Shown here piece by piece: positions 27,576 through 57,224 of a stretch of DNA of 64,000 nt (the first letter of the stretch is position 1; each line of letters opens with the position of its first letter). The stretch is from Botryllus schlosseri (taxonomy: Eukaryota). Made by a program: the position numbers and the translations under genes. The DNA lies in NCBI GenBank assembly GCA_051294905.1, contig CM119378.1, positions 28,334,001 to 28,398,000 on the forward strand, read 5' to 3'. A model generated the notes under the pieces. The model worked only from the letters and a program-made list of their open reading frames with translations. It was not told the DNA's origin and ran no database searches.

Positions 27576-29173
27576 CAGCTAAACAAAAATTATGTATTCG
27601 TAACGGCTAACAGTACACAACAGTAAAGTACCGGTAGGTAATCGCCTATGCCAATGTGGGTGTCTGATTCCACAGCCTACCGCAAGTTGTTTCGACACCT
27701 TTCTATCTTTTCATTGCATCGAATTATTTGTGCTGCATTGAACTGATAAAATTGCTAATAAACCAAACTGATGATAAATCACAGCTTATCCAGAAATTTA
27801 ACCAAGACATAGGTCACATAGGTTAGTATTGCAGATACGGTGAATTTATTACCCCATGAACTATGACATATTATAGACTGAATTTAACTTGAAACAACTG
27901 CTAAAATGTAGGCGATTTTGGGAGACTATAGTGAAAAATTGTTGAAGTTTCAGTGCTATATAATTTTACATACAGGCCTAGGCTACAGCTATATTTTCAG
28001 TAATAGCATTTCGCTAAAGCATGATTATTCAGGTTAAAAATCAAGAGTTCCATTCAAAATATGGCCCTCGTTAGATTGAAATCACGCACGCAGACAGACG
28101 CATCTCAATATCCTGAGTGGAATTAGTTTGTCGTCAGTTAATACTCCTTACAATGACAACAAAATCAAAACTGAAAAGTACGTACATTTTACAACATTAT
28201 GTTATTAGTAAGTAATAATTAATTATGACCGTTAAATTGACAAGAAGAACATGACATTGACAATACCCTGAAACTGAACTGGGTCGAAAAACCGATCTTA
28301 AAAACTGATCAGAGAGGATAAAACATAAGACCTAAAACCCGTCTCGGCTCCCGGACCGTCAAGACACCTAGTGTTGACATACAGAAATAAAATCAACGTT
28401 TTTACACAACTGTATTCGAGATACGCACCTCAATACGATAAACAACGCATCAAATCGATATTTATGTCATTTTACCAGAAACAGGAACCTTTACTTATGA
28501 CCGTTATTGCTTGCAAACGACTTGCTGAGGCGAGCGACGCAATACACAATTCCCAATACAGAAGCCGGTCTGCCTGATGCGTGAATCAAAAAAGGCTGAG
28601 CGCACTCAGCCGCCTCTGTCAAGAGATACGTACCTTCAAATACAACCAAATACTCCAATGTCTGGTTCGTACGGAGCAGGGGCGTACTAGTACTTGGAGA
28701 GTCGTAAGTACTGGTGCGGGTAGAAAGGATCTCGTCTGTTACGTCTTACAGTTGGGACTTGCCGTCGCTTGGAATTTTGTTGCTCGGCACAATTCCGTTG
28801 TTCGCGCAAAGTTACAGTGTAAGTGTCGAGGTTCGGGTTCGACACGATTGGATAGTATTTACGGATGGATTGGCTGGAACAAAAGAAAACACATTTTCTG
28901 CATATCGAAAAAATGCTAACCCGTTGGCGCCCGCCCGACGAATGAGATCGTCCGATGCTACAGTCACAGTGCTACATCACAGAACGACACTCGGTGTGGT
29001 ATCGCCGACTACCTAAGCCTGTCGAAGCACGTATATATTACACTGTCGCTCGTGCAAGCAAAGGTTGGCAAAGCCGGAATTGCACCGAATTTCAAGCGAC
29101 GGGCGGTCGTTTTTAGACAGGCGCGAGTGCTGATAATTCTCCAACTCCTAGTAGTCCCCCTTGTCCGTTAAAT

Positions 29174-29245
29174 ATTCATCGGAGTATTTGGTTGTTATAA
29201 GGTTTGTATGCTTTTTCTTCTCTCGTTTGCCGAGTGCGCTCGGCT
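29174..29245 (+). ncRNA. Putative spliced-leader (SL) RNA gene, unit 1 (leader exon about 29174-29201, donor GT 29202)
   Basis: ATTCATCGGAGTATTTGGTTGTTATAAG|GTTTGT, then a U-tract and the perfect hairpin GCCGAG-TGCG-CTCGGC (29229-44). Resembles tunicate SL exons as I recall them (unverified). The 5' and 3' ends are uncertain. Confidence 0.65.
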
Positions 29246-30686
29246 CTTTCACGACAAATGACAAGTAAACCCGGTCCGTTTGATGTGGGGGGGGGGTAAA
29301 CGGTGGGAGTAATTCCCGAGTGAACGCGGCGGGACGAAGCCCGTAACGCAACACACAGCACGACACATTTTCTTTGTCCCGGTCCGTATTGAGGCGCGTC
29401 GAGTCGCGTTTGTCGCGGGCGGACAGGGCTATCGCGGCGGGTGTTTTTTTTTGATTCGTACTCGTTCGGGTCGGATTCCGTCGCATGTTTTGTTTGTGAT
29501 TTTGTTGTGGGTAGTTGTGTGACCAGACGTGAGTGTTGACTGCAAAGTCGTTTTGCCAAGTGGGTCCGAGCCAGTATATACATTACGTCAGATAACCCTA
29601 ACCTTGGCCTTTGTAAATACTAGTCTGCTCAGATGTACGATTGGGATTCTTCGGCACACGGTTGTTCGGTTCGATTCAGATTCCGAACGGCATTATTCGG
29701 AGTAGACTGCGAGTAGCTGGGGGTCTCTCGCGTTTGCCCGCTCGCGCTCGCTCGTAGTTGGGGGGGGGGGGGGGGCAGGCGTGCACAATGGCACGGGTAC
29801 TCAAAAATGAATCGAGTAACAATTTTCAAGATTCGAATCGTGTAGTGATACATGACTTCATAGCGTACTGAAATTATACGATCTTGTCGCTAAGGGTTGA
29901 ATTATAGTTTCGATGTAATTAGTTTTAAAACCTCGATTGGTCACGTGGCGGCATACGAAGCCGGGTGCGTCATTGTATATGAGATATCTGTGAAGTCGTG
30001 GTCGAGCCGCGGCAACAGTGACAATGCATGCGCAATTAAATGGGTACGCTCGAAAATATGCCTGACCTGCCGCAATTACATTTAATCCGATGCGAACACT
30101 CGACACGACTCGAAGCCCAATACACATTGTCGTCTACTTCTGACCCGGCGTTTCCGATATCTTATCGCTCTTTCAATTCAGAGTCCCAATTTCCGGTGCG
30201 GCGCTCGACGCTCAGGCTCTCGCTCTCCCCCGTGGCGAGCGACGGCCGATCAATGGGCTTTTGCCGCGCCGTAGTACTGGCTGGCGACGTGGCAGAACCG
30301 GGCTGCGTTCACCGCCTGACAGGTCTGAACTGCCCCTCGGATGAGCGCGGGTCCGATAGCGCTGCGGGTTTTGCTAGCTCCGCGAAACGCGGCTTTAGGA
30401 AGTAGAAGTGTTAATTTTGCACAGCTCGATCGAGCCGCCCCGCCGTCGAAAACCGGCCGTTTACGCAGCCGCGACGTCTCGCGCGGATCCGGAACGGGCG
30501 CGCCGGTCAGCGCGCGAACACGCTCCGCCCCGCGAACCGATTCGGATCGGTCGGCCACTTCCGGGGTCGTCGCCACGGCCCGGGTCACGACGAACACTAG
30601 CACAGAAAGCCGTGCCCCGACCGGCGTCGGCCGTCGCCGAGAGCTTTATCGTTTCGTTCGCGTCTGCTCGTTCGGCGGACGTTGGT

Positions 30687-30692
30687 TATATA
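30687..30692 (+). promoter_or_regulatory. H1 TATA-like box (repeated in every unit)
   Basis: TATATA about 80 bp upstream of the H1 ATG. Confidence 0.55.
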
Positions 30693-30767
30693 GTAATTTG
30701 CGCCTTTTCTCGACTTCTACAACAACTGCAGAAATATTCACCGTTCTATTTGTACGTACAAAGCACG

Positions 30768-31301
30768 ATGTCAGCCGCCAAGAAAACTACGACGACGCCG
30801 AGTCACGCTCCTTTCAAGGACATGATCGTCGCCGCCATCAGGAAGCTGGGCGACAAGAAAGGCTCCTCGCGCCAAGCCATCAAGAAGCACGTTTTGAGCA
30901 GCAACAAAGTCACCGAGCAGTCGACTAAAACCAACCTGAACCGGACTCTCGCAAAAATGCTCGCGTCCGGCCAGCTCGTCCACCCGAAGAACAGCACGGG
31001 ACGGTACAAGCTCGCCGCTCCGAAGGCCCCGGCCCAGCAGGCAGCCAAAAAGAAGACCGTCGTCGCCAAGAAGAAACCGGCCGCCAAGAAGGCCGCCGTC
31101 GGCAAGGAATCGACCAAAAAAACTGCGGCCAAAAAGCCCAAACCGAAGAAGACTCCCGTCAAGAAAGCAGCGGCCAAGAAATCGGCCACGGTCAAGAAGA
31201 GCGCCGCCAAAAAGCCGGCTTCCAAGAGACCCGCTTCGAAAAAGTCGCCGAAGAAAGTCGTCAAGAAGGCTGCCAAAAAGACCTCAGCCAAGAAGAAGTA
31301 A
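30768..31301 (+). CDS. H1: Histone H1, 177 aa (unit 1)
   Basis: MSAAKK...SHAPFKDMIVAAI...GSSRQAIKKH winged-helix domain and K/A/P-rich tail; 3' stem-loop follows. Confidence 0.96.
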   Translation: MSAAKKTTTTPSHAPFKDMIVAAIRKLGDKKGSSRQAIKKHVLSSNKVTEQSTKTNLNRTLAKMLASGQLVHPKNSTGRYKLAAPKAPAQQAAKKKTVVAKKKPAAKKAAVGKESTKKTAAKKPKPKKTPVKKAAAKKSATVKKSAAKKPASKRPASKKSPKKVVKKAAKKTSAKKK

Positions 31302-31335
31302 AAGCTTGCGTGTCGCCAACACCACCGCTATTAAC

Positions 31336-31351
31336 GGCTCTTTTCAGGGCC
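31336..31351 (+). promoter_or_regulatory. Histone 3' stem-loop, H1 (same in all units)
   Basis: GGCTCT-TTTC-AGGGCC. Confidence 0.9.
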
Positions 31352-31572
31352 ATCCAAAGTTGATGTTTACGCGTATAGAGTACGGGCCGACTGTCGCAAT
31401 ATCGCGACGGCGAGACTCGTATTTACAAACTACCCATTGAGTTAGTCGAGCGGTTGTACAAGTCGGGTGATTTATTGGAAAACTGATCGGGGTCTGTTTA
31501 CTGGTCAGTAGTATAATTATGTACTATACGACCGACCAAAATATTCTCTACACAGTTTCAACAAGTTCGGGT

Positions 31573-31588
31573 GGCTCTGAAAAGAGCC
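31573..31588 (-). promoter_or_regulatory. Histone 3' stem-loop, H4 (all units)
   Basis: Minus strand GGCTCT-TTTC-AGAGCC. Confidence 0.95.
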
Positions 31589-31620
31589 GTTGTTGTCTTG
31601 TGATCGCAGTAGCGAGTCGC

Positions 31621-31944
<324 letters not shown>

Positions 31945-32085
31945 TTACTGAAATTTTCAAACGTAAAATTACAGTAAGGTATCACTTTCAGCAACGAATG
32001 ATATGCGCCGCCACTCAACGCATTATGTCAACGTCGCCAGCGGACGTTCACGAAACGCTTTAACGCGCCAAATTCGACGGCCGAG

Positions 32086-32093
32086 TATAAATA
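32086..32093 (+). promoter_or_regulatory. H3 TATA box (all units)
   Basis: TATAAATA about 90 bp upstream of the H3 ATG, in the divergent H4/H3 promoter. Confidence 0.7.
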
Positions 32094-32104
32094 GCCTTGC
32101 GTGA

Positions 32105-32593
<489 letters not shown>

Positions 32594-32625
32594 GCTGCCG
32601 GCGATTAGCACGACGCAAAAGAAAC

Positions 32626-32641
32626 GGCTCTTTTCAGAGCC
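32626..32641 (+). promoter_or_regulatory. Histone 3' stem-loop, H3 (all units)
   Basis: GGCTCT-TTTC-AGAGCC. Confidence 0.95.
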
Positions 32642-32969
32642 ACCCGAACTATACGGTATCGAGAGAGCTTAGAATGGGCGCGCTGCTTTCAGTTTTATAA
32701 TTATTGTCATCGCGGCATGTTGCCTTCCGCAGCGTCCGTTTCACAGCGCGCGCACTACTTTGTAATACACAAACCAGTCTGGAAGATTCGCATCCCACGA
32801 ACCTCTAACAGCAGATAAGCTACCCATGTAATACACGAACCCGTCTCGTTCATCGCACCGCAGGTACCGGAAACGCAACTTACCACCTAGCGTAAATAAC
32901 AGAGTACGGCATAACAACTGAACTGATAACGCTCGCGAGAGCAAGCAATCAAAACGCACAAGAGCGGGT

Positions 32970-32985
32970 GGCCCTTACAAGGGCC
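32970..32985 (-). promoter_or_regulatory. Histone 3' stem-loop, H2B, with atypical UGUA loop (all units)
   Basis: Minus strand GGCCCT-TGTA-AGGGCC. Confidence 0.85.
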
Positions 32986-33019
32986 GTTGTTGTCGATTTT
33001 CGGCGTCGAGCACAACCAT

Positions 33020-33379
33020 CTACTTAGAGCTGGTGTACTTGGTGACGGCTTTGGTGCCTTCAGACACGGCGTGCTTGGCCAGTTCGCCGGGCAGCAAGAG
33101 CCTGACGGCGGTCTGGATCTCGCGGCTGCTGATGGTCGAGCGCTTGTTGTAGTGGGCGAGACGAGACGACTCGCTGGCGATCCTCTCGAACACGTCGTTG
33201 ACGAACGAGTTCATGATGCTCATGGCCTTGCTGGAGATTCCAGTATCGGGATGAACCTGCTTCAACACCTTGTAGATGTAGATGCTGAAGCTTTCCTTTC
33301 GCCTCGACTTTCTTTTCTTCTTGCCATCTTTCGGCGTTTGCTTTTTCACCAACTTCTTGCTTCCCTTAGACGCGACCAT
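33020..33379 (-). CDS. H2B: Histone H2B, 119 aa (unit 1)
   Basis: MVASKGSKK...[26 protein letters not shown]...AVTKYTSSK; ATG at 33379. Confidence 0.98.
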
Positions 33380-33416
33380 TTTGCTGTTTGTGATCGGCGT
33401 CAAGCCGCAGATCCGA

Positions 33417-33422
33417 TTTATA
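33417..33422 (-). promoter_or_regulatory. H2B TATA box (all units)
   Basis: Minus strand TATAAA about 40 bp upstream of the ATG. Confidence 0.6.
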
Positions 33423-33535
33423 GTCGGGCGTATGCTAATGATGCGAGTAGCAAAAGCACGAAACGAGACAGCCGCGTCACGGATTTTTTAGGCGCGCGAA
33501 ATAGCCGTCTCTCGTTTTATGTCACAACGTTGTGA

Positions 33536-33991
<456 letters not shown>

Positions 33992-34022
33992 GCGCATCGC
34001 AAAAGCCTTCATCATCACAAAC

Positions 34023-34038
34023 GGCACTTTTCAGTGCC
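34023..34038 (+). promoter_or_regulatory. Histone 3' stem-loop, H2A (all units)
   Basis: GGCACT-TTTC-AGTGCC. Confidence 0.9.
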
Positions 34039-34981
34039 ACCCGATCGAGCAGGTTTTATGAAATTGTATACACACTTACATGTCATTGCGCGCGCAGTAT
34101 ATTCATAAGACTGAGACTCGAGCGAGCCTAGAGTAGAGCGTTTTTAAAGCAATACTTGTATGGTTACGGCGATGTACATTGTCGAACAATTTTGATTTGG
34201 AATTGAATAGAATAGTGTTTACGGTGGCCAACTAGAATTAGACGCGCTCGACGGGTGGCGGGCGGTACGGCGGCGGCGCCGCCTTGATTGCTCAGCGGGT
34301 TTCTGTCACCGTTATTGCTTGCAAACGACTTGCTGAGGCGAGCGACGCAATACACAATTCCCAATACAGAAGCCGGTCTGCCTGATGCGTGAATCAAAAA
34401 AGGCTGAGCGCACTCAGCCGCCTCTGTCAAGAGATACGTACCTTCAAATACAACCAAATACTCCAATGTCTGGTTCGTACGGAGCAGGGGCGTACTAGTA
34501 CTTGGAGAGTCGTAAGTACTGGTGCGGGTAGAAAGGATCTCGTCTGTTACGTCTTACAGTTGGGACTTGCCGTCGCTTGGAATTTTGTTGCTCGGCACAA
34601 TTCCGTTGTTCGCGCAAAGTTACAGTGTAAGTGTCGAGGTTCGGGTTCGACACGATTGGATAGTATTTACGGATGGATTGGCTGGAACAAAAGAAAACAC
34701 ATTTTCTGCATATCGAAAAAATGCTAACCCGTTGGCGCCCGCCCGACGAATGAGATCGTCCGATGCTACAGTCACAGTGCTACATCACAGAACGACACTC
34801 GGTGTGGTATCGCCGACTACCTAAGCCTGTCGAAGCACGTATATATTACACTGTCGCTCGTGCAAGCAAAGGTTGGCAAAGCCGGAATTGCACCGAATTT
34901 CAAGCGACGGGCGGTCGTTTTTAGACAGGCGCGAGTGCTGATAATTCTCCAACTCCTAGTAGTCCCCCTTGTCCGTTAAAT

Positions 34982-35053
34982 ATTCATCGGAGTATTTGGT
35001 TGTTATAAGGTTTGTATGCTTTTTCTTCTCTCGTTTGCCGAGTGCGCTCGGCT
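34982..35053 (+). ncRNA. Putative SL RNA gene, unit 2
   Basis: Same sequence as 29174-29245. Confidence 0.65.
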
Positions 35054-36575
35054 CTTTCACGACAAATGACAAGTAAACCCGGTCCGTTTGATGTGGGGGG
35101 GGGGTAAACGGTGGGAGTAATTCCCGAGTGAACGCGGCGGGACGAAGCCCGTAACGCAACACACAGCACGACACATTTTCTTTGTCCCGGTCCGTATTGA
35201 GGCGCGTCGAGTCGCGTTTGTCGCGGGCGGACAGGGCTATCGCGGCGGGTGTTTTTTTTTGATTCGTACTCGTTCGGGTCGGATTCCGTCGCATGTTTTG
35301 TTTGTGATTTTGTTGTGGGTAGTTGTGTGACCAGACGTGAGTGTTGACTGCAAAGTCGTTTTGCCAAGTGGGTCCGAGCCAGTATATACATTACGTCAGA
35401 TAACCCTAACCTTGGCCTTTGTAAATACTAGTCTGCTCAGATGTACGATTGGGATTCTTCGGCACACGGTTGTTCGGTTCGATTCAGATTCCGAACGGCA
35501 TTATTCGGAGTAGACTGCGAGTAGCTGGGGGTCTCTCGCGTTTGCCCGCTCGCGCTCGCTCGTAGTTGGGGGGGGGGGGGGGGCAGGCGTGCACAATGGC
35601 ACGGGTACTCAAAAATGAATCGAGTAACAATTTTCAAGATTCGAATCGTGTAGTGATACATGACTTCATAGCGTACTGAAATTATACGATCTTGTCGCTA
35701 AGGGTTGAATTATAGTTTCGATGTAATTAGTTTTAAAACCTCGATTGGTCACGTGGCGGCATACGAAGCCGGGTGCGTCATTGTATATGAGATATCTGTG
35801 AAGTCGTGGTCGAGCCGCGGCAACAGTGACAATGCATGCGCAATTAAATGGGTACGCTCGAAAATATGCCTGACCTGCCGCAATTACATTTAATCCGATG
35901 CGAACACTCGACACGACTCGAAGCCCAATACACATTGTCGTCTACTTCTGACCCGGCGTTTCCGATATCTTATCGCTCTTTCAATTCAGAGTCCCAATTT
36001 CCGGTGCGGCGCTCGACGCTCAGGCTCTCGCTCTCCCCCGTGGCGAGCGACGGCCGATCAATGGGCTTTTGCCGCGCCGTAGTACTGGCTGGCGACGTGG
36101 CAGAACCGGGCTGCGTTCACCGCCTGACAGGTCTGAACTGCCCCTCGGATGAGCGCGGGTCCGATAGCGCTGCGGGTTTTGCTAGCTCCGCGAAACGCGG
36201 CTTTAGGAAGTAGAAGTGTTAATTTTGCACAGCTCGATCGAGCCGCCCCGCCGTCGAAAACCGGCCGTTTACGCAGCCGCGACGTCTCGCGCGGATCCGG
36301 AACGGGCGCGCCGGTCAGCGCGCGAACACGCTCCGCCCCGCGAACCGATTCGGATCGGTCGGCCACTTCCGGGGTCGTCGCCACGGCCCGGGTCACGACG
36401 AACACTAGCACAGAAAGCCGTGCCCCGACCGGCGTCGGCCGTCGCCGAGAGCTTTATCGTTTCGTTCGCGTCTGCTCGTTCGGCGGACGTTGGTTATATA
36501 GTAATTTGCGCCTTTTCTCGACTTCTACAACAACTGCAGAAATATTCACCGTTCTATTTGTACGTACAAAGCACG

Positions 36576-37109
36576 ATGTCAGCCGCCAAGAAAACTACGA
36601 CGACGCCGAGTCACGCTCCTTTCAAGGACATGATCGTCGCCGCCATCAGGAAGCTGGGCGACAAGAAAGGCTCCTCGCGCCAAGCCATCAAGAAGCACGT
36701 TTTGAGCAGCAACAAAGTCACCGAGCAGTCGACTAAAACCAACCTGAACCGGACTCTCGCAAAAATGCTCGCGTCCGGCCAGCTCGTCCACCCGAAGAAC
36801 AGCACGGGACGGTACAAGCTCGCCGCTCCGAAGGCCCCGGCCCAGCAGGCAGCCAAAAAGAAGACCGTCGTCGCCAAGAAGAAACCGGCCGCCAAGAAGG
36901 CCGCCGTCGGCAAGGAATCGACCAAAAAAACTGCGGCCAAAAAGCCCAAACCGAAGAAGACTCCCGTCAAGAAAGCAGCGGCCAAGAAATCGGCCACGGT
37001 CAAGAAGAGCGCCGCCAAAAAGCCGGCTTCCAAGAGACCCGCTTCGAAAAAGTCGCCGAAGAAAGTCGTCAAGAAGGCTGCCAAAAAGACCTCAGCCAAG
37101 AAGAAGTAA
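36576..37109 (+). CDS. H1: Histone H1 (unit 2)
   Basis: Same protein as unit 1. Confidence 0.96.
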   Translation: MSAAKKTTTTPSHAPFKDMIVAAIRKLGDKKGSSRQAIKKHVLSSNKVTEQSTKTNLNRTLAKMLASGQLVHPKNSTGRYKLAAPKAPAQQAAKKKTVVAKKKPAAKKAAVGKESTKKTAAKKPKPKKTPVKKAAAKKSATVKKSAAKKPASKRPASKKSPKKVVKKAAKKTSAKKK

Positions 37110-37428
37110 AAGCTTGCGTGTCGCCAACACCACCGCTATTAACGGCTCTTTTCAGGGCCATCCAAAGTTGATGTTTACGCGTATAGAGTACGGGCCGACT
37201 GTCGCAATATCGCGACGGCGAGACTCGTATTTACAAACTACCCATTGAGTTAGTCGAGCGGTTGTACAAGTCGGGTGATTTATTGGAAAACTGATCGGGG
37301 TCTGTTTACTGGTCAGTAGTATAATTATGTACTATACGACCGACCAAAATATTCTCTACACAGTTTCAACAAGTTCGGGTGGCTCTGAAAAGAGCCGTTG
37401 TTGTCTTGTGATCGCAGTAGCGAGTCGC

Positions 37429-37752
<324 letters not shown>

Positions 37753-37912
37753 TTACTGAAATTTTCAAACGTAAAATTACAGTAAGGTATCACTTTCAGC
37801 AACGAATGATATGCGCCGCCACTCAACGCATTATGTCAACGTCGCCAGCGGACGTTCACGAAACGCTTTAACGCGCCAAATTCGACGGCCGAGTATAAAT
37901 AGCCTTGCGTGA

Positions 37913-38401
<489 letters not shown>

Positions 38402-38827
38402 GCTGCCGGCGATTAGCACGACGCAAAAGAAACGGCTCTTTTCAGAGCCACCCGAACTATACGGTATCGAGAGAGCTTAGAATGGGCGCGCTGCTTTCAG
38501 TTTTATAATTATTGTCATCGCGGCATGTTGCCTTCCGCAGCGTCCGTTTCACAGCGCGCGCACTACTTTGTAATACACAAACCAGTCTGGAAGATTCGCA
38601 TCCCACGAACCTCTAACAGCAGATAAGCTACCCATGTAATACACGAACCCGTCTCGTTCATCGCACCGCAGGTACCGGAAACGCAACTTACCACCTAGCG
38701 TAAATAACAGAGTACGGCATAACAACTGAACTGATAACGCTCGCGAGAGCAAGCAATCAAAACGCACAAGAGCGGGTGGCCCTTACAAGGGCCGTTGTTG
38801 TCGATTTTCGGCGTCGAGCACAACCAT

Positions 38828-39187
38828 CTACTTAGAGCTGGTGTACTTGGTGACGGCTTTGGTGCCTTCAGACACGGCGTGCTTGGCCAGTTCGCCGGGC
38901 AGCAAGAGCCTGACGGCGGTCTGGATCTCGCGGCTGCTGATGGTCGAGCGCTTGTTGTAGTGGGCGAGACGAGACGACTCGCTGGCGATCCTCTCGAACA
39001 CGTCGTTGACGAACGAGTTCATGATGCTCATGGCCTTGCTGGAGATTCCAGTATCGGGATGAACCTGCTTCAACACCTTGTAGATGTAGATGCTGAAGCT
39101 TTCCTTTCGCCTCGACTTTCTTTTCTTCTTGCCATCTTTCGGCGTTTGCTTTTTCACCAACTTCTTGCTTCCCTTAGACGCGACCAT
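38828..39187 (-). CDS. H2B: Histone H2B (unit 2)
   Basis: Same protein as unit 1. Confidence 0.98.
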
Positions 39188-39343
39188 TTTGCTGTTTGTG
39201 ATCGGCGTCAAGCCGCAGATCCGATTTATAGTCGGGCGTATGCTAATGATGCGAGTAGCAAAAGCACGAAACGAGACAGCCGCGTCACGGATTTTTTAGG
39301 CGCGCGAAATAGCCGTCTCTCGTTTTATGTCACAACGTTGTGA

Positions 39344-39799
<456 letters not shown>

Positions 39800-40789
39800 G
39801 CGCATCGCAAAAGCCTTCATCATCACAAACGGCACTTTTCAGTGCCACCCGATCGAGCAGGTTTTATGAAATTGTATACACACTTACATGTCATTGCGCG
39901 CGCAGTATATTCATAAGACTGAGACTCGAGCGAGCCTAGAGTAGAGCGTTTTTAAAGCAATACTTGTATGGTTACGGCGATGTACATTGTCGAACAATTT
40001 TGATTTGGAATTGAATAGAATAGTGTTTACGGTGGCCAACTAGAATTAGACGCGCTCGACGGGTGGCGGGCGGTACGGCGGCGGCGCCGCCTTGATTGCT
40101 CAGCGGGTTTCTGTCACCGTTATTGCTTGCAAACGACTTGCTGAGGCGAGCGACGCAATACACAATTCCCAATACAGAAGCCGGTCTGCCTGATGCGTGA
40201 ATCAAAAAAGGCTGAGCGCACTCAGCCGCCTCTGTCAAGAGATACGTACCTTCAAATACAACCAAATACTCCAATGTCTGGTTCGTACGGAGCAGGGGCG
40301 TACTAGTACTTGGAGAGTCGTAAGTACTGGTGCGGGTAGAAAGGATCTCGTCTGTTACGTCTTACAGTTGGGACTTGCCGTCGCTTGGAATTTTGTTGCT
40401 CGGCACAATTCCGTTGTTCGCGCAAAGTTACAGTGTAAGTGTCGAGGTTCGGGTTCGACACGATTGGATAGTATTTACGGATGGATTGGCTGGAACAAAA
40501 GAAAACACATTTTCTGCATATCGAAAAAATGCTAACCCGTTGGCGCCCGCCCGACGAATGAGATCGTCCGATGCTACAGTCACAGTGCTACATCACAGAA
40601 CGACACTCGGTGTGGTATCGCCGACTACCTAAGCCTGTCGAAGCACGTATATATTACACTGTCGCTCGTGCAAGCAAAGGTTGGCAAAGCCGGAATTGCA
40701 CCGAATTTCAAGCGACGGGCGGTCGTTTTTAGACAGGCGCGAGTGCTGATAATTCTCCAACTCCTAGTAGTCCCCCTTGTCCGTTAAAT

Positions 40790-40861
40790 ATTCATCGGAG
40801 TATTTGGTTGTTATAAGGTTTGTATGCTTTTTCTTCTCTCGTTTGCCGAGTGCGCTCGGCT
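40790..40861 (+). ncRNA. Putative SL RNA gene, unit 3
   Basis: Same sequence as 29174-29245. Confidence 0.65.
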
Positions 40862-42383
40862 CTTTCACGACAAATGACAAGTAAACCCGGTCCGTTTGAT
40901 GTGGGGGGGGGGTAAACGGTGGGAGTAATTCCCGAGTGAACGCGGCGGGACGAAGCCCGTAACGCAACACACAGCACGACACATTTTCTTTGTCCCGGTC
41001 CGTATTGAGGCGCGTCGAGTCGCGTTTGTCGCGGGCGGACAGGGCTATCGCGGCGGGTGTTTTTTTTTGATTCGTACTCGTTCGGGTCGGATTCCGTCGC
41101 ATGTTTTGTTTGTGATTTTGTTGTGGGTAGTTGTGTGACCAGACGTGAGTGTTGACTGCAAAGTCGTTTTGCCAAGTGGGTCCGAGCCAGTATATACATT
41201 ACGTCAGATAACCCTAACCTTGGCCTTTGTAAATACTAGTCTGCTCAGATGTACGATTGGGATTCTTCGGCACACGGTTGTTCGGTTCGATTCAGATTCC
41301 GAACGGCATTATTCGGAGTAGACTGCGAGTAGCTGGGGGTCTCTCGCGTTTGCCCGCTCGCGCTCGCTCGTAGTTGGGGGGGGGGGGGGGGCAGGCGTGC
41401 ACAATGGCACGGGTACTCAAAAATGAATCGAGTAACAATTTTCAAGATTCGAATCGTGTAGTGATACATGACTTCATAGCGTACTGAAATTATACGATCT
41501 TGTCGCTAAGGGTTGAATTATAGTTTCGATGTAATTAGTTTTAAAACCTCGATTGGTCACGTGGCGGCATACGAAGCCGGGTGCGTCATTGTATATGAGA
41601 TATCTGTGAAGTCGTGGTCGAGCCGCGGCAACAGTGACAATGCATGCGCAATTAAATGGGTACGCTCGAAAATATGCCTGACCTGCCGCAATTACATTTA
41701 ATCCGATGCGAACACTCGACACGACTCGAAGCCCAATACACATTGTCGTCTACTTCTGACCCGGCGTTTCCGATATCTTATCGCTCTTTCAATTCAGAGT
41801 CCCAATTTCCGGTGCGGCGCTCGACGCTCAGGCTCTCGCTCTCCCCCGTGGCGAGCGACGGCCGATCAATGGGCTTTTGCCGCGCCGTAGTACTGGCTGG
41901 CGACGTGGCAGAACCGGGCTGCGTTCACCGCCTGACAGGTCTGAACTGCCCCTCGGATGAGCGCGGGTCCGATAGCGCTGCGGGTTTTGCTAGCTCCGCG
42001 AAACGCGGCTTTAGGAAGTAGAAGTGTTAATTTTGCACAGCTCGATCGAGCCGCCCCGCCGTCGAAAACCGGCCGTTTACGCAGCCGCGACGTCTCGCGC
42101 GGATCCGGAACGGGCGCGCCGGTCAGCGCGCGAACACGCTCCGCCCCGCGAACCGATTCGGATCGGTCGGCCACTTCCGGGGTCGTCGCCACGGCCCGGG
42201 TCACGACGAACACTAGCACAGAAAGCCGTGCCCCGACCGGCGTCGGCCGTCGCCGAGAGCTTTATCGTTTCGTTCGCGTCTGCTCGTTCGGCGGACGTTG
42301 GTTATATAGTAATTTGCGCCTTTTCTCGACTTCTACAACAACTGCAGAAATATTCACCGTTCTATTTGTACGTACAAAGCACG

Positions 42384-42917
42384 ATGTCAGCCGCCAAGAA
42401 AACTACGACGACGCCGAGTCACGCTCCTTTCAAGGACATGATCGTCGCCGCCATCAGGAAGCTGGGCGACAAGAAAGGCTCCTCGCGCCAAGCCATCAAG
42501 AAGCACGTTTTGAGCAGCAACAAAGTCACCGAGCAGTCGACTAAAACCAACCTGAACCGGACTCTCGCAAAAATGCTCGCGTCCGGCCAGCTCGTCCACC
42601 CGAAGAACAGCACGGGACGGTACAAGCTCGCCGCTCCGAAGGCCCCGGCCCAGCAGGCAGCCAAAAAGAAGACCGTCGTCGCCAAGAAGAAACCGGCCGC
42701 CAAGAAGGCCGCCGTCGGCAAGGAATCGACCAAAAAAACTGCGGCCAAAAAGCCCAAACCGAAGAAGACTCCCGTCAAGAAAGCAGCGGCCAAGAAATCG
42801 GCCACGGTCAAGAAGAGCGCCGCCAAAAAGCCGGCTTCCAAGAGACCCGCTTCGAAAAAGTCGCCGAAGAAAGTCGTCAAGAAGGCTGCCAAAAAGACCT
42901 CAGCCAAGAAGAAGTAA
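42384..42917 (+). CDS. H1: Histone H1 (unit 3)
   Basis: Same protein as unit 1. Confidence 0.96.
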   Translation: MSAAKKTTTTPSHAPFKDMIVAAIRKLGDKKGSSRQAIKKHVLSSNKVTEQSTKTNLNRTLAKMLASGQLVHPKNSTGRYKLAAPKAPAQQAAKKKTVVAKKKPAAKKAAVGKESTKKTAAKKPKPKKTPVKKAAAKKSATVKKSAAKKPASKRPASKKSPKKVVKKAAKKTSAKKK

Positions 42918-43236
42918 AAGCTTGCGTGTCGCCAACACCACCGCTATTAACGGCTCTTTTCAGGGCCATCCAAAGTTGATGTTTACGCGTATAGAGTACG
43001 GGCCGACTGTCGCAATATCGCGACGGCGAGACTCGTATTTACAAACTACCCATTGAGTTAGTCGAGCGGTTGTACAAGTCGGGTGATTTATTGGAAAACT
43101 GATCGGGGTCTGTTTACTGGTCAGTAGTATAATTATGTACTATACGACCGACCAAAATATTCTCTACACAGTTTCAACAAGTTCGGGTGGCTCTGAAAAG
43201 AGCCGTTGTTGTCTTGTGATCGCAGTAGCGAGTCGC

Positions 43237-43560
<324 letters not shown>

Positions 43561-43720
43561 TTACTGAAATTTTCAAACGTAAAATTACAGTAAGGTATCA
43601 CTTTCAGCAACGAATGATATGCGCCGCCACTCAACGCATTATGTCAACGTCGCCAGCGGACGTTCACGAAACGCTTTAACGCGCCAAATTCGACGGCCGA
43701 GTATAAATAGCCTTGCGTGA

Positions 43721-44209
<489 letters not shown>

Positions 44210-44635
44210 GCTGCCGGCGATTAGCACGACGCAAAAGAAACGGCTCTTTTCAGAGCCACCCGAACTATACGGTATCGAGAGAGCTTAGAATGGGCGCGCT
44301 GCTTTCAGTTTTATAATTATTGTCATCGCGGCATGTTGCCTTCCGCAGCGTCCGTTTCACAGCGCGCGCACTACTTTGTAATACACAAACCAGTCTGGAA
44401 GATTCGCATCCCACGAACCTCTAACAGCAGATAAGCTACCCATGTAATACACGAACCCGTCTCGTTCATCGCACCGCAGGTACCGGAAACGCAACTTACC
44501 ACCTAGCGTAAATAACAGAGTACGGCATAACAACTGAACTGATAACGCTCGCGAGAGCAAGCAATCAAAACGCACAAGAGCGGGTGGCCCTTACAAGGGC
44601 CGTTGTTGTCGATTTTCGGCGTCGAGCACAACCAT

Positions 44636-44995
44636 CTACTTAGAGCTGGTGTACTTGGTGACGGCTTTGGTGCCTTCAGACACGGCGTGCTTGGCCAGTT
44701 CGCCGGGCAGCAAGAGCCTGACGGCGGTCTGGATCTCGCGGCTGCTGATGGTCGAGCGCTTGTTGTAGTGGGCGAGACGAGACGACTCGCTGGCGATCCT
44801 CTCGAACACGTCGTTGACGAACGAGTTCATGATGCTCATGGCCTTGCTGGAGATTCCAGTATCGGGATGAACCTGCTTCAACACCTTGTAGATGTAGATG
44901 CTGAAGCTTTCCTTTCGCCTCGACTTTCTTTTCTTCTTGCCATCTTTCGGCGTTTGCTTTTTCACCAACTTCTTGCTTCCCTTAGACGCGACCAT
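44636..44995 (-). CDS. H2B: Histone H2B (unit 3)
   Basis: Same protein as unit 1. Confidence 0.98.
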
Positions 44996-45151
44996 TTTGC
45001 TGTTTGTGATCGGCGTCAAGCCGCAGATCCGATTTATAGTCGGGCGTATGCTAATGATGCGAGTAGCAAAAGCACGAAACGAGACAGCCGCGTCACGGAT
45101 TTTTTAGGCGCGCGAAATAGCCGTCTCTCGTTTTATGTCACAACGTTGTGA

Positions 45152-45607
<456 letters not shown>

Positions 45608-46597
45608 GCGCATCGCAAAAGCCTTCATCATCACAAACGGCACTTTTCAGTGCCACCCGATCGAGCAGGTTTTATGAAATTGTATACACACTTACATGTC
45701 ATTGCGCGCGCAGTATATTCATAAGACTGAGACTCGAGCGAGCCTAGAGTAGAGCGTTTTTAAAGCAATACTTGTATGGTTACGGCGATGTACATTGTCG
45801 AACAATTTTGATTTGGAATTGAATAGAATAGTGTTTACGGTGGCCAACTAGAATTAGACGCGCTCGACGGGTGGCGGGCGGTACGGCGGCGGCGCCGCCT
45901 TGATTGCTCAGCGGGTTTCTGTCACCGTTATTGCTTGCAAACGACTTGCTGAGGCGAGCGACGCAATACACAATTCCCAATACAGAAGCCGGTCTGCCTG
46001 ATGCGTGAATCAAAAAAGGCTGAGCGCACTCAGCCGCCTCTGTCAAGAGATACGTACCTTCAAATACAACCAAATACTCCAATGTCTGGTTCGTACGGAG
46101 CAGGGGCGTACTAGTACTTGGAGAGTCGTAAGTACTGGTGCGGGTAGAAAGGATCTCGTCTGTTACGTCTTACAGTTGGGACTTGCCGTCGCTTGGAATT
46201 TTGTTGCTCGGCACAATTCCGTTGTTCGCGCAAAGTTACAGTGTAAGTGTCGAGGTTCGGGTTCGACACGATTGGATAGTATTTACGGATGGATTGGCTG
46301 GAACAAAAGAAAACACATTTTCTGCATATCGAAAAAATGCTAACCCGTTGGCGCCCGCCCGACGAATGAGATCGTCCGATGCTACAGTCACAGTGCTACA
46401 TCACAGAACGACACTCGGTGTGGTATCGCCGACTACCTAAGCCTGTCGAAGCACGTATATATTACACTGTCGCTCGTGCAAGCAAAGGTTGGCAAAGCCG
46501 GAATTGCACCGAATTTCAAGCGACGGGCGGTCGTTTTTAGACAGGCGCGAGTGCTGATAATTCTCCAACTCCTAGTAGTCCCCCTTGTCCGTTAAAT

Positions 46598-46669
46598 ATT
46601 CATCGGAGTATTTGGTTGTTATAAGGTTTGTATGCTTTTTCTTCTCTCGTTTGCCGAGTGCGCTCGGCT
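46598..46669 (+). ncRNA. Putative SL RNA gene, unit 4
   Basis: Same sequence as 29174-29245. Confidence 0.65.
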
Positions 46670-48191
46670 CTTTCACGACAAATGACAAGTAAACCCGGTC
46701 CGTTTGATGTGGGGGGGGGGTAAACGGTGGGAGTAATTCCCGAGTGAACGCGGCGGGACGAAGCCCGTAACGCAACACACAGCACGACACATTTTCTTTG
46801 TCCCGGTCCGTATTGAGGCGCGTCGAGTCGCGTTTGTCGCGGGCGGACAGGGCTATCGCGGCGGGTGTTTTTTTTTGATTCGTACTCGTTCGGGTCGGAT
46901 TCCGTCGCATGTTTTGTTTGTGATTTTGTTGTGGGTAGTTGTGTGACCAGACGTGAGTGTTGACTGCAAAGTCGTTTTGCCAAGTGGGTCCGAGCCAGTA
47001 TATACATTACGTCAGATAACCCTAACCTTGGCCTTTGTAAATACTAGTCTGCTCAGATGTACGATTGGGATTCTTCGGCACACGGTTGTTCGGTTCGATT
47101 CAGATTCCGAACGGCATTATTCGGAGTAGACTGCGAGTAGCTGGGGGTCTCTCGCGTTTGCCCGCTCGCGCTCGCTCGTAGTTGGGGGGGGGGGGGGGGC
47201 AGGCGTGCACAATGGCACGGGTACTCAAAAATGAATCGAGTAACAATTTTCAAGATTCGAATCGTGTAGTGATACATGACTTCATAGCGTACTGAAATTA
47301 TACGATCTTGTCGCTAAGGGTTGAATTATAGTTTCGATGTAATTAGTTTTAAAACCTCGATTGGTCACGTGGCGGCATACGAAGCCGGGTGCGTCATTGT
47401 ATATGAGATATCTGTGAAGTCGTGGTCGAGCCGCGGCAACAGTGACAATGCATGCGCAATTAAATGGGTACGCTCGAAAATATGCCTGACCTGCCGCAAT
47501 TACATTTAATCCGATGCGAACACTCGACACGACTCGAAGCCCAATACACATTGTCGTCTACTTCTGACCCGGCGTTTCCGATATCTTATCGCTCTTTCAA
47601 TTCAGAGTCCCAATTTCCGGTGCGGCGCTCGACGCTCAGGCTCTCGCTCTCCCCCGTGGCGAGCGACGGCCGATCAATGGGCTTTTGCCGCGCCGTAGTA
47701 CTGGCTGGCGACGTGGCAGAACCGGGCTGCGTTCACCGCCTGACAGGTCTGAACTGCCCCTCGGATGAGCGCGGGTCCGATAGCGCTGCGGGTTTTGCTA
47801 GCTCCGCGAAACGCGGCTTTAGGAAGTAGAAGTGTTAATTTTGCACAGCTCGATCGAGCCGCCCCGCCGTCGAAAACCGGCCGTTTACGCAGCCGCGACG
47901 TCTCGCGCGGATCCGGAACGGGCGCGCCGGTCAGCGCGCGAACACGCTCCGCCCCGCGAACCGATTCGGATCGGTCGGCCACTTCCGGGGTCGTCGCCAC
48001 GGCCCGGGTCACGACGAACACTAGCACAGAAAGCCGTGCCCCGACCGGCGTCGGCCGTCGCCGAGAGCTTTATCGTTTCGTTCGCGTCTGCTCGTTCGGC
48101 GGACGTTGGTTATATAGTAATTTGCGCCTTTTCTCGACTTCTACAACAACTGCAGAAATATTCACCGTTCTATTTGTACGTACAAAGCACG

Positions 48192-48725
48192 ATGTCAGCC
48201 GCCAAGAAAACTACGACGACGCCGAGTCACGCTCCTTTCAAGGACATGATCGTCGCCGCCATCAGGAAGCTGGGCGACAAGAAAGGCTCCTCGCGCCAAG
48301 CCATCAAGAAGCACGTTTTGAGCAGCAACAAAGTCACCGAGCAGTCGACTAAAACCAACCTGAACCGGACTCTCGCAAAAATGCTCGCGTCCGGCCAGCT
48401 CGTCCACCCGAAGAACAGCACGGGACGGTACAAGCTCGCCGCTCCGAAGGCCCCGGCCCAGCAGGCAGCCAAAAAGAAGACCGTCGTCGCCAAGAAGAAA
48501 CCGGCCGCCAAGAAGGCCGCCGTCGGCAAGGAATCGACCAAAAAAACTGCGGCCAAAAAGCCCAAACCGAAGAAGACTCCCGTCAAGAAAGCAGCGGCCA
48601 AGAAATCGGCCACGGTCAAGAAGAGCGCCGCCAAAAAGCCGGCTTCCAAGAGACCCGCTTCGAAAAAGTCGCCGAAGAAAGTCGTCAAGAAGGCTGCCAA
48701 AAAGACCTCAGCCAAGAAGAAGTAA
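48192..48725 (+). CDS. H1: Histone H1 (unit 4)
   Basis: Same protein as unit 1. Confidence 0.96.
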   Translation: MSAAKKTTTTPSHAPFKDMIVAAIRKLGDKKGSSRQAIKKHVLSSNKVTEQSTKTNLNRTLAKMLASGQLVHPKNSTGRYKLAAPKAPAQQAAKKKTVVAKKKPAAKKAAVGKESTKKTAAKKPKPKKTPVKKAAAKKSATVKKSAAKKPASKRPASKKSPKKVVKKAAKKTSAKKK

Positions 48726-49044
48726 AAGCTTGCGTGTCGCCAACACCACCGCTATTAACGGCTCTTTTCAGGGCCATCCAAAGTTGATGTTTACGCGTAT
48801 AGAGTACGGGCCGACTGTCGCAATATCGCGACGGCGAGACTCGTATTTACAAACTACCCATTGAGTTAGTCGAGCGGTTGTACAAGTCGGGTGATTTATT
48901 GGAAAACTGATCGGGGTCTGTTTACTGGTCAGTAGTATAATTATGTACTATACGACCGACCAAAATATTCTCTACACAGTTTCAACAAGTTCGGGTGGCT
49001 CTGAAAAGAGCCGTTGTTGTCTTGTGATCGCAGTAGCGAGTCGC

Positions 49045-49368
<324 letters not shown>

Positions 49369-49528
49369 TTACTGAAATTTTCAAACGTAAAATTACAGTA
49401 AGGTATCACTTTCAGCAACGAATGATATGCGCCGCCACTCAACGCATTATGTCAACGTCGCCAGCGGACGTTCACGAAACGCTTTAACGCGCCAAATTCG
49501 ACGGCCGAGTATAAATAGCCTTGCGTGA

Positions 49529-50017
<489 letters not shown>

Positions 50018-50443
50018 GCTGCCGGCGATTAGCACGACGCAAAAGAAACGGCTCTTTTCAGAGCCACCCGAACTATACGGTATCGAGAGAGCTTAGAATG
50101 GGCGCGCTGCTTTCAGTTTTATAATTATTGTCATCGCGGCATGTTGCCTTCCGCAGCGTCCGTTTCACAGCGCGCGCACTACTTTGTAATACACAAACCA
50201 GTCTGGAAGATTCGCATCCCACGAACCTCTAACAGCAGATAAGCTACCCATGTAATACACGAACCCGTCTCGTTCATCGCACCGCAGGTACCGGAAACGC
50301 AACTTACCACCTAGCGTAAATAACAGAGTACGGCATAACAACTGAACTGATAACGCTCGCGAGAGCAAGCAATCAAAACGCACAAGAGCGGGTGGCCCTT
50401 ACAAGGGCCGTTGTTGTCGATTTTCGGCGTCGAGCACAACCAT

Positions 50444-50803
50444 CTACTTAGAGCTGGTGTACTTGGTGACGGCTTTGGTGCCTTCAGACACGGCGTGCTT
50501 GGCCAGTTCGCCGGGCAGCAAGAGCCTGACGGCGGTCTGGATCTCGCGGCTGCTGATGGTCGAGCGCTTGTTGTAGTGGGCGAGACGAGACGACTCGCTG
50601 GCGATCCTCTCGAACACGTCGTTGACGAACGAGTTCATGATGCTCATGGCCTTGCTGGAGATTCCAGTATCGGGATGAACCTGCTTCAACACCTTGTAGA
50701 TGTAGATGCTGAAGCTTTCCTTTCGCCTCGACTTTCTTTTCTTCTTGCCATCTTTCGGCGTTTGCTTTTTCACCAACTTCTTGCTTCCCTTAGACGCGAC
50801 CAT
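50444..50803 (-). CDS. H2B: Histone H2B (unit 4)
   Basis: Same protein as unit 1. Confidence 0.98.
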
Positions 50804-50959
50804 TTTGCTGTTTGTGATCGGCGTCAAGCCGCAGATCCGATTTATAGTCGGGCGTATGCTAATGATGCGAGTAGCAAAAGCACGAAACGAGACAGCCGCG
50901 TCACGGATTTTTTAGGCGCGCGAAATAGCCGTCTCTCGTTTTATGTCACAACGTTGTGA

Positions 50960-51415
<456 letters not shown>

Positions 51416-52405: not shown

Positions 52406-52477
52406 ATTCATCGGAGTATTTGGTTGTTATAAGGTTTGTATGCTTTTTCTTCTCTCGTTTGCCGAGTGCGCTCGGCT
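52406..52477 (+). ncRNA. Putative SL RNA gene, unit 5
   Basis: Same sequence as 29174-29245. Confidence 0.65.

Positions 52478-54853: not shown

Positions 54854-55177
<324 letters not shown>

Positions 55178-55337: not shown

Positions 55338-55826
<489 letters not shown>

Positions 55827-56768: not shown

Positions 56769-57224
<456 letters not shown>

What the first reader, a model, noticed from the sequence alone, without database searches (positions are those of the whole stretch)
29174..29245. A spliced-leader-like RNA gene embedded in every histone repeat unit
Seen: each unit has ATTCATCGGAGTATTTGGTTGTTATAAG|GTTTGT, a following U-rich tract and a perfect 6-bp hairpin (GCCGAG-TGCG-CTCGGC). 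Recalled, not verified here: the Ciona SL is ATTCTATTTGAATAAG, which is colinear with this sequence (ATTC..TATTTG..ATAAG). Stolidobranch ascidian leaders, as I remember them, end GGAGTATTTGGTTGTATTAAG (19/21 to this site). SL genes are known to be linked to 5S rRNA repeats in nematodes, cnidarians and Oikopleura; linkage to a five-histone unit is something I do not recall for chordates. Inference: SL and histone genes are co-amplified and co-homogenised, and the host is probably a stolidobranch ascidian. No canonical Sm site (RAU4-6GR) is evident, and tunicate SL RNAs are reported to have non-canonical ones.
Basis: partly seen in the sequence, partly recalled or inferred. Interest (0 to 1): 0.85.

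Follow-up and report, generated by a model that had tools for sequence, protein, structure and literature searches.

The report
Variant spliced-leader genes inside histone repeats
Every unit of this sea-squirt-type tandem histone repeat carries two head-to-head, diverged copies of the spliced-leader RNA gene, but neither encodes the leader that actually caps most of the animal's mRNAs, so this is a new gene linkage with at most a minor role in trans-splicing.

Summary
The 34-mer with its GT donor, U-rich tract and 6-bp hairpin occurs six times at a 5808-bp period, inside an H1-H4-H3-H2B-H2A repeat.

- The published stolidobranch leader is (G)ATTGGAGTATTTGGTTGTATTAAG (PMC3795323). The site matches it 21/24.
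- Raw RNA-seq reads of the same species label show that this canonical leader, not the window's version, sits next to the template-switch oligo on thousands of reads with diverse downstream sequence.
- About 250 reads (~2%) fit the finding's 21-mer ending TTATAAG. They read ATT where the window has ATC, and none covers the intron.
It has a canonical 5' end, a 2-nt insertion before AAG, a better donor, the same UGCG-loop hairpin with one compensatory pair, and U6G.
- The two copies share only two promoter-like blocks, the exon and the hairpin.
- Other histone units of the same architecture lack any SL-like sequence. In another species the canonical SL gene is repeated together with U2 snRNA.

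Verdict: these are real SL RNA gene paralogues co-amplified with the histone genes, weakly used or decaying, and not the main SL genes. The scan's only earlier notes concern the retrotransposon in this same window.

The parts
29178..29201 (+). Copy b (the finding): variant leader exon ATCGGAGTATTTGGTTGTTATAAG. Further copies lie at 34986-35009, 40794-40817, 46602-46625, 52410-52433 and 58219-58242.
   Evidence: It matches the canonical ATTGGAGTATTTGGTTGTATTAAG 21/24. About 250 X23 reads lie on 29181-29201 only: 87 carry TSO+GATT before 29181 and 41 carry diverse letters behind 29201.
29202..29207 (+). Copy b splice donor GTTTGT, weaker than the canonical GTAAGT.
   Evidence: Sequence. The canonical gene of organism C has AAG|GTAAGT.
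29229..29244 (+). Copy b hairpin GCCGAG-UGCG-CUCGGC, followed by UCUUUCACGA. No U-run plus G stands at the place where copy a has U6G.
   Evidence: present in both the MFE and the centroid fold; I2; GAGTGC is invariant in all three SL RNAs.
29138..29153 (+). Copy b proximal upstream block TCTCCAACTCCTAGTA, at -40 to -25.
   Evidence: 12 hits in the window, all upstream of the 12 SL-like genes; 0.07 expected; 16/20 at matched position, better than 300/300 shuffles.
29075..29102 (+). Copy b distal upstream block CGGAATTGCACCGAATTTCAAGCGACGG, at -103 to -76.
   Evidence: I7, I9; 16/20, P about 0.003.
28634..28659 (-). Its first 21 nt are canonical and TG is inserted before AAG. Further copies lie at 34442-34467, 40250-40275, 46058-46083, 51866-51891 and 57675-57700.
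   Evidence: Thousands of X23 reads lie on 28639-28659 only and continue with AAG plus diverse letters, so they carry the canonical leader, not copy a's.
28587..28633 (-). Copy a intron part: donor GTACGT, hairpin GGCUGAG-UGCG-CUCAGCC (28594-28611), then a U6G Sm-like tract (28587-28593).
   Evidence: One U-A to C-G compensatory pair relative to copy b.
28685..28700 (-). Copy a proximal upstream block TCTCCAAGTACTAGTA, at -41 to -26.
28762..28797 (-). Copy a distal upstream block CGGAATTGTGCCGA..AATTCCAAGCGACGG.
28500..58245 (.). Tandem array: [copy a - copy b - H1 - H4 - H3 - H2B - H2A] x5, plus one more a-b pair.
58246..64000 (+). Non-LTR retroelement (ORF1 59186-60340; ORF2 with APE+RT 60337-63795). 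It begins right after AAG|GTT of the sixth copy b, in the same orientation, and runs off the window.

Best explanation
The element is a diverged paralogue of the stolidobranch spliced-leader (SL) RNA gene. It is one of a head-to-head pair that entered the spacer between H2A and H1 and was then amplified and homogenised together with the five histone genes. Both copies keep the parts an SL RNA gene needs. These are two upstream promoter-like blocks at matched distances, a leader starting at a pyrimidine-A, an AAG|GU donor, and a GC hairpin with a UGCG loop that a canonical SL gene of another species also has. Both leaders depart from the leader that is invariant across styelids and pyurids: copy b by 3 substitutions and copy a by a 2-nt insertion. 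Copy b also has a weaker donor and has lost the U-run-G tract. Shown here: the homology, the paired architecture, the co-amplification, and that the animal's dominant leader is the canonical one, which neither copy encodes. Inferred: the genes are, or recently were, transcribed from snRNA-type promoters. A copy-b-type leader (..GTTGTTATAAG) is trans-spliced onto diverse mRNAs at roughly 2% of leader-bearing reads, probably from copies that read ATT rather than ATC at leader positions 1-3. The bulk of SL RNA comes from canonical genes elsewhere in the genome.
For: - Six copies of each gene, none expected by chance.
- 21/24 identity to the published stolidobranch SL.
- Between copies a and b, only four blocks are conserved at matched positions; everything else is at random level. 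The proximal block beats 300/300 shuffles and occurs nowhere else in the window.
- The hairpin is retained with one compensatory pair, and GAGUGC is shared with the canonical gene in L014.
- X23 reads show TSO-GGGG directly followed by ATTGGAG..GTATT+AAG+diverse sequence. There are 4138 TSO-bearing and 2474 3'-diverging reads on 28639-28659.
- About 250 reads lie on 29181-29201, with TSO+GATT before and diverse letters behind.
- These reads were placed on copy b although copy a offers canonical reads a perfect 21-mer. They show the same share of TSO-bearing reads as the canonical set, which argues that they really end in TTATAAG.
- X23 animals differ from the assembly at several positions of the H1 5'UTR in the same unit. 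A C/T difference at 29180 between individuals is therefore plausible (table 3).
Against: - No read carries the window's ATC (29178-29180), and none covers the intron 29202+. X23 is a SMART-type cDNA library that would not be expected to hold an unpolyadenylated ~80-nt RNA.
- I could not see positions 29196/29197 in the reads: the table was truncated. The TTATAAG variant is therefore inferred from read placement and likeness classes, not read off directly.
- Copy b has a poor donor (GUUUGU) and no Sm-like U-run after the hairpin.
- Folding energies are no better than shuffles (z about 0).
- The perfect identity of the units could partly reflect assembly polishing.
- No copy-a-type leader end appeared among the listed loose ends.
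Confidence: 0.65

Rival explanations
1. Both copies are dead SL RNA pseudogenes that hitch-hiked into the histone unit and are multiplied only by unequal crossing-over of the array. The blocks they share reflect conservation in their functional source genes before insertion, not selection since then. The ~250 reads on copy b come from SL genes elsewhere.
For: Both leaders deviate from a leader that is identical in seven stolidobranch species. Copy b has a weak donor and a degenerate U-tract. No read carries ATC at 29178-29180 or any intron sequence, and the canonical leader accounts for about 97% or more of leader reads. Related histone units do without any SL gene. One copy is already disrupted by a retroelement.
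Against: The promoter-like blocks, donor GT and hairpin (with a compensatory pair) are intact in both copies, while the flanks and linker have diverged to random level. A leader with exactly copy b's 3' half appears to be in use. Array-wide homogenisation would spread a disabling mutation as readily as remove it, so sequence alone cannot prove decay.
Confidence: 0.28
2. One reading: the histone-linked gene is the species' working SL RNA gene, and its 28-mer or 21-mer is the leader on the animal's trans-spliced mRNAs.
For: High copy number and homogenisation. Close similarity to the stolidobranch SL. Some reads fit its 21-mer.
Against: Thousands of TSO-adjacent reads carry ATTGGAGTATTTGGTTGTATT+AAG, against about 250 that fit copy b. 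None extends into ATTCATC. The window holds no exact canonical leader followed by GT.
Confidence: 0.04
3. The resemblance is incidental, or the sequence acts as a cis-element of the histone unit (promoter, insulator or origin) and not as an RNA gene.
For: No Rfam family matches. The fold z-scores are about 0.
Against: A 15-nt exact core plus AAG|GT plus a hairpin shared with a canonical SL gene of another species, found twice per unit in inverted orientation with matching upstream blocks, is far beyond chance. Rfam has no tunicate SL family to match.
Confidence: 0.03

Closest known systems
Canonical stolidobranch spliced leader (Botryllus schlosseri, Halocynthia roretzi, Boltenia villosa, Polyandrocarpa misakiensis, Styela plicata; PMC3795323 supplement) and its gene as found here in metagenome contigs L014/L015 (organism C)
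   Same: Leader core GGAGTATTTGGTTGT is identical. The leader ends in AAG followed by GT, starts at A after a pyrimidine, has a short intron part with a GC hairpin carrying GAGUGC/UGCG, and the gene is multicopy and tandem.
   Different: Copy b's leader differs at 3 of 24 positions, and copy a's has a 2-nt insertion. A 23-27-nt linker lies between donor and hairpin, against 7 nt in the canonical gene. The partner gene in the repeat is a five-histone unit here, and a U2 snRNA in organism C.
Ciona intestinalis SL RNA genes (16-nt leader ATTCTATTTGAATAAG, 46-nt SL RNA, Sm-like AGCUUUGG, ~670 copies, mostly one cluster on chromosome 8; PMC7986045, PMC6836712)
   Same: A tunicate SL RNA gene family with a very short RNA, a non-canonical Sm-like site and high-copy tandem organisation. 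The leader is colinear at TATTTG..ATAAG.
   Different: The Ciona repeat is described as a short SL-only unit (264 bp, from memory of Yeats et al. 2010, which I could not read here). Here the genes are a divergent pair inside a 5.8-kb protein-coding histone unit and encode non-dominant leader variants.
SL RNA genes linked to 5S rRNA repeats (nematode SL1, Oikopleura dioica, others; established knowledge, Ganot et al. 2004 as cited in PMC7986045)
   Same: The SL RNA gene is embedded in the tandem repeat of another multicopy gene family and evolves in concert with it.
   Different: The partner here is a Pol II histone quintet, not 5S rDNA. In those systems the linked gene is the working SL gene; here it is a minor or decaying variant.
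Site-specific non-LTR retrotransposons of SL RNA genes (NeSL-1 in C. elegans; SLACS/CRE/CZAR in trypanosomatids) and the Tx1-clade elements that target small-RNA genes (established knowledge)
   Same: An APE+RT element sits exactly at the leader/intron boundary of the sixth copy b, in the gene's orientation, and carries an SL-like fragment at its own 5' end.
   Different: Only one insertion was seen, so target specificity was not tested here. It is context for this finding, not part of the SL gene.

Membership tests
Spliced-leader (SL) RNA gene | The leader is found at the 5' end of many unrelated mRNAs. | tested here: inconclusive
   about 250 X23 reads lie on 29181-29201. 87 carry the template-switch oligo just upstream and 41 carry diverse letters downstream. 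All read ATT, not the window's ATC, before GGAG. Positions 29196/29197 could not be inspected directly.
Spliced-leader (SL) RNA gene | The leader is immediately followed by a GU splice donor in the gene. | tested here: met
   AAG|GTTTGT at 29199-29207 and AAG|GTACGT in copy a.
Spliced-leader (SL) RNA gene | The gene is transcribed as a discrete small capped RNA (leader plus intron part). | tested here: inconclusive
   X23 and X21 have zero depth over 29202-29256. Both are cDNA libraries that are not expected to capture an ~80-nt non-polyadenylated RNA. The 'RNA?' contig runs cover the whole spacer as DNA would.
Spliced-leader (SL) RNA gene | An Sm-binding site lies in the intron part. | tested here: inconclusive
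   Copy b has no RAU4-6GR, only GCUUUUUCU before the hairpin and UCUUUCACG after it. Copy a has CU6GA after the hairpin. The Ciona site is itself non-canonical (AGCUUUGG, PMC7986045), so the criterion is loose in tunicates.
Spliced-leader (SL) RNA gene | Sequence homology to the clade's SL RNA beyond the leader. | tested here: met
   GAGUGC and a UGCG-loop hairpin are shared by copy a, copy b and the canonical gene in L014. One compensatory pair separates a and b.
Spliced-leader (SL) RNA gene | Own upstream promoter elements of snRNA-gene type. | tested here: inconclusive
   Two blocks are conserved between a and b at matched distances. There is no functional or cross-species evidence that they are PSE/DSE.
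Principal (canonical) stolidobranch SL RNA gene | Encodes exactly ATTGGAGTATTTGGTTGTATTAAG. | tested here: not met
   Copy b has 3 mismatches and copy a has a TG insertion. No exact canonical leader followed by GT exists in the window.
Principal (canonical) stolidobranch SL RNA gene | Supplies the dominant leader of the species' mRNAs. | tested here: not met
   The dominant leader in X23 is the canonical one (thousands of reads), against about 250 reads that fit copy b.

The most novel reading that the evidence does not exclude
The histone-array SL genes are a specialised, co-regulated source of variant leaders. They would be switched on together with the tandem (cleavage-type) histone genes, for example in oogenesis or early embryos or within a shared histone-locus/Cajal-body compartment. 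A subset of mRNAs would then receive a distinct leader (..TTATAAG or ..TTTGAAG) at stages not sampled by the one run I could lay.
Probability: 0.12. Interest if true: 0.8.

Novelty: new variant of a known kind. Interest (0 to 1): 0.55.

Why it matters
SL RNA genes are known to ride in 5S rDNA repeats or in their own short repeats. I found no report of them inside a histone repeat in the papers I could search. At least two complete histone units of the same architecture from other organisms lack them, so the linkage looks recent and lineage-specific. This gives a natural case for asking three things: what happens to an snRNA-type gene captured by another family's concerted evolution, whether tunicates use minor leader variants, and which promoter and RNA elements of the tiny tunicate SL RNA are constrained. 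The a/b comparison points to two upstream blocks, the leader and one hairpin. It also shows that the leader-like sequence in this array must not be taken as the species' SL for SL-based annotation.

Tried and rejected
- Rfam found nothing, at gathering level on the whole window or at E<=10 on 28450-29450. There is no tunicate SL family in it to match.
- The H1 and retroelement ORF1 proteins are not on record for exact look-up.
- The closest H1 relatives give contigs that stop short of the SL genes. L021 has too little upstream sequence. L028 starts at window-equivalent 29546, 290 nt downstream of copy b.
- The metagenome scan for GGAGTATTTGGTTGT-N3-5-AAGGT returned 11 loci. Nine are unrelated chance matches in soil-type contigs. 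Two (L014/L015) are the canonical gene, but of organism C, not organism A.
- The idea that the 244 reads in the 90-95% likeness class are canonical reads mis-laid on copy b was dropped. The roughly 261 H1-5'UTR reads all carry at least one difference and can absorb most of the sub-99% classes. Canonical reads also have a perfect 21-mer at copy a.
- The high depth at 29755-29775 is poly-G read tails on a G16 run, not a transcript.
- Fold energies of both copies and of the canonical RNA are no better than shuffles, so thermodynamics gives no support either way.
- Yeats et al. 2010 and Vandenberghe et al. 2001 are not held in the library.

Full report
**Observation**

The 34-mer ATTCATCGGAGTATTTGGTTGTTATAAG|GTTTGT is present exactly at 29174, 34982, 40790, 46598 and 52406. 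It is present with two changes in its last three bases at 58215. Shuffles expect none. It is followed by a U-rich stretch and the hairpin GCCGAG-TGCG-CTCGGC at 29229-29244.

The period is 5808 bp. Each unit encodes H1 (+), H4 (-), H3 (+), H2B (-) and H2A (+). The array runs from about 28500 to 58245. Its five complete units are identical except for one extra G in a G-run. Rfam has no match for any part of the region.

**Recalled sequences**

- The Ciona leader ATTCTATTTGAATAAG, its 46-nt SL RNA, the Sm-like AGCUUUGG and about 670 gene copies are stated in PMC7986045.
- The stolidobranch leader GATTGGAGTATTTGGTTGTATTAAG is listed for Botryllus schlosseri, Halocynthia roretzi, Boltenia villosa, Polyandrocarpa misakiensis, Styela plicata and B. 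primigenus. Herdmania has one change (supplement of PMC3795323).
- The first G is absent from several of these records. It is preceded by the oligo's G-run in the reads below, so I take the leader as 24 nt starting at A.
- On that reading, the finding's copy (ATCGGAGTATTTGGTTGTTATAAG from 29178) matches 21/24.

**RNA evidence (one call allowed)**

I laid raw reads of X23 on 28600-30780. X23 is a bulk paired RNA-seq run under the same species label, and its reads carry a SMART-type template-switch oligo (TSO).

*The canonical leader.* The dominant signal was not at the finding. It was at 28639-28659, a 21-nt stretch covered at a mean depth of about 3000.
- 4138 reads continue on one side with the reverse complement of ...GCAGAGTACATGGGG.
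- 2474 reads continue on the other side with diverse letters, of which the three adjacent ones read CTT.
- Read on the minus strand, this is TSO-GGGG|ATTGGAGTATTTGGTTGTATT|AAG|diverse mRNA.
- The animal's main leader is therefore the canonical stolidobranch one.
- The window matches it here only because the minus strand holds a second SL-like gene (see below).

*The finding's copy.*
- About 250 reads (from bin depths) lie on 29181-29201 only.
- 87 of them continue upstream with ...ACATGGGGATT, so they read ATT where the window has ATC.
- 41 continue downstream of 29201 with diverse letters (agreement 0.41).
- No read covers 29174-29180 or the intron.

*Why I infer a real TTATAAG variant.*
- A canonical read has a perfect 21-mer at copy a but only 19/21 at copy b.
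- No read was reported to fit two places.
- The share of TSO-bearing reads is the same in both sets.
- From this I infer that these ~250 reads really end in TTATAAG and represent a minor leader variant at about 2% of leader reads.
- I could not read positions 29196/29197 directly because the table was truncated.
- The likeness classes do not contradict this. The roughly 261 H1-5'UTR reads all carry at least one difference and can fill most of the sub-99% classes.

*Differences between the X23 animals and the assembly.* Within the same unit, the X23 animals show 30739 C>T in about 95% of reads, 30751 T>C in about 55%, and a 1-nt deletion at 30760 in about 44%. A C/T difference at 29180 between individuals is therefore plausible.

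**The second copy**

On the minus strand, 515 bp upstream and head-to-head with the finding's gene, every unit has ATTGGAGTATTTGGTTGTATTTGAAG|GTACGT. This is followed by GGCUGAG-UGCG-CUCAGCC and CUUUUUUGAUUCACGC. There are six copies.
- Its first 21 nt are canonical, and TG is inserted before AAG.
- Its donor is closer to consensus than copy b's.
- Its post-hairpin U6G is a better Sm-like site than copy b's.

**Comparison of the two copies**

Aligned from their starts, the two copies share only four blocks; the rest is at random level.
- A distal block, CGGAATTG..CCGA..TTYCAAGCGACGG.
- A proximal block, TCTCCAAsTmCTAGTA at -41 to -25. It occurs 12 times in the window, only upstream of the 12 genes, against 0.07 expected. 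It beats 300 of 300 shuffles.
- The leader.
- The hairpin, with one U-A to C-G compensatory pair.

This pattern marks elements that are, or were, under selection in an SL RNA gene. It argues against a chance resemblance or a retro-copied mRNA 5' end.

**Relatives**

*The canonical gene in another species.*
- A metagenome scan found the canonical gene ...CT|ATTGGAGTATTTGGTTGTATTAAG|GTAAGTTGAGTGCCTGCGCGGCAUUUAUAUUGAUC in two contigs.
- It shares GAGUGC and the UGCG-containing hairpin with copies a and b.
- It lies 490 bp upstream of a full U2 snRNA (165 bits), in a tandem repeat of about 1329 bp.
- Run look-up assigns this repeat to a different organism label (C), not to the window's (A).

*Other histone units.*
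- Exact look-ups with the window's H2B and H2A proteins, and with H1 homologues, fetched four other histone-unit types with the same gene order and orientation.
- Two of them have complete spacers.
- None contains an SL-like exon within 3 mismatches of the 15-nt core.
- The closest relative (about 90% identical spacer and H1) starts 290 nt downstream of copy b and so gives no information.
- The SL-histone linkage therefore looks specific to this lineage.

I found no open paper on the genomic organisation of stolidobranch SL RNA genes or on an SL-histone linkage.

**Interpretation**

The finding is a genuine SL RNA gene paralogue, one of a divergent pair captured by the histone repeat and amplified with it. 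It is not the species' main SL gene. The canonical leader is encoded by neither copy in the window and must come from elsewhere. Whether the pair is weakly active or decaying is open.
- For activity: the intact promoter-like blocks, donor and hairpin, and the apparent 2% use of a copy-b-type leader.
- For decay: departures from a leader that is otherwise invariant across two ascidian families, copy b's weak donor and lost U-run, the absence of reads with the window's exact 5' end, and no copy-a-type leader end among the listed loose ends.

I put 0.65 on 'paralogue, weakly used or recently active' and 0.28 on 'pure pseudogenes'.

**Context**

The sixth copy b is cut right after AAG|GTT by a plus-strand non-LTR element. 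It has an APE+RT ORF2 and an ORF1 with a weak zinc knuckle. Its first ~40 nt contain an SL-3'-half look-alike with a canonical-type donor. This agrees with the scan's earlier notes on this window. It suggests that retroelements treat these sequences as SL genes. One insertion does not establish target specificity.

Noticed in passing
L014:1-1453 and L015 (metagenome contigs, organism C): The canonical stolidobranch SL RNA gene lies 490 bp upstream of a complete U2 snRNA gene (Rfam 165 bits) in a tandem repeat of about 1329 bp. The contig ends repeat each other. I did not find an SL-U2 linkage described in the searchable papers.
   Followed up: partly
window 30719-30767: H1 mRNA has its own capped 5' end at 30719. 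The template-switch oligo stands directly before it in 81 X23 reads, and also in X21. A TATA-like GTTATATAG lies about 30 nt upstream. This histone mRNA is therefore not trans-spliced.
   Followed up: partly
window 58246-64000: A plus-strand non-LTR retroelement starts exactly after AAG|GTT of the sixth copy b. ORF1 is 59186-60340 and ORF2 (APE+RT) is 60337-63795. Its first ~40 nt hold TTTTGGTTGTAAAAAG|GTAGAA, an SL look-alike. A 242-bp tandem repeat (2.3 copies) lies at 58509-59054 in its 5' part. Its 3' end is beyond the window.
   Followed up: partly
window 30739, 30751, 30760: The RNA-seq animals (X23) differ from the assembly in the H1 5'UTR: C>T in about 95% of reads, T>C in about 55%, and a 1-nt deletion in about 44%. 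The array sequence therefore varies between individuals or between arrays, despite perfect identity within the assembled array.
   Followed up: no
window 29760-29775: A G16 run collects thousands of poly-G read tails and TSO-GGGG fragments. This produces spurious depth and 'joints' to the SL site. It is an artefact, not a transcript.
   Followed up: yes
window 22662-23287: An (AGTCA)n microsatellite of 124 copies lies upstream of the array. An N gap lies at 25273-25579.
   Followed up: no
L001 (4800-bp period), L022-L035, L003/L036/L039, L037: At least four other five-histone repeat types from marine metagenomes share the same gene order and orientation and have identical H2A and H2B proteins. 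None has an SL-like exon. L001's spacer carries a 268-aa ORF without a Pfam hit.
   Followed up: partly
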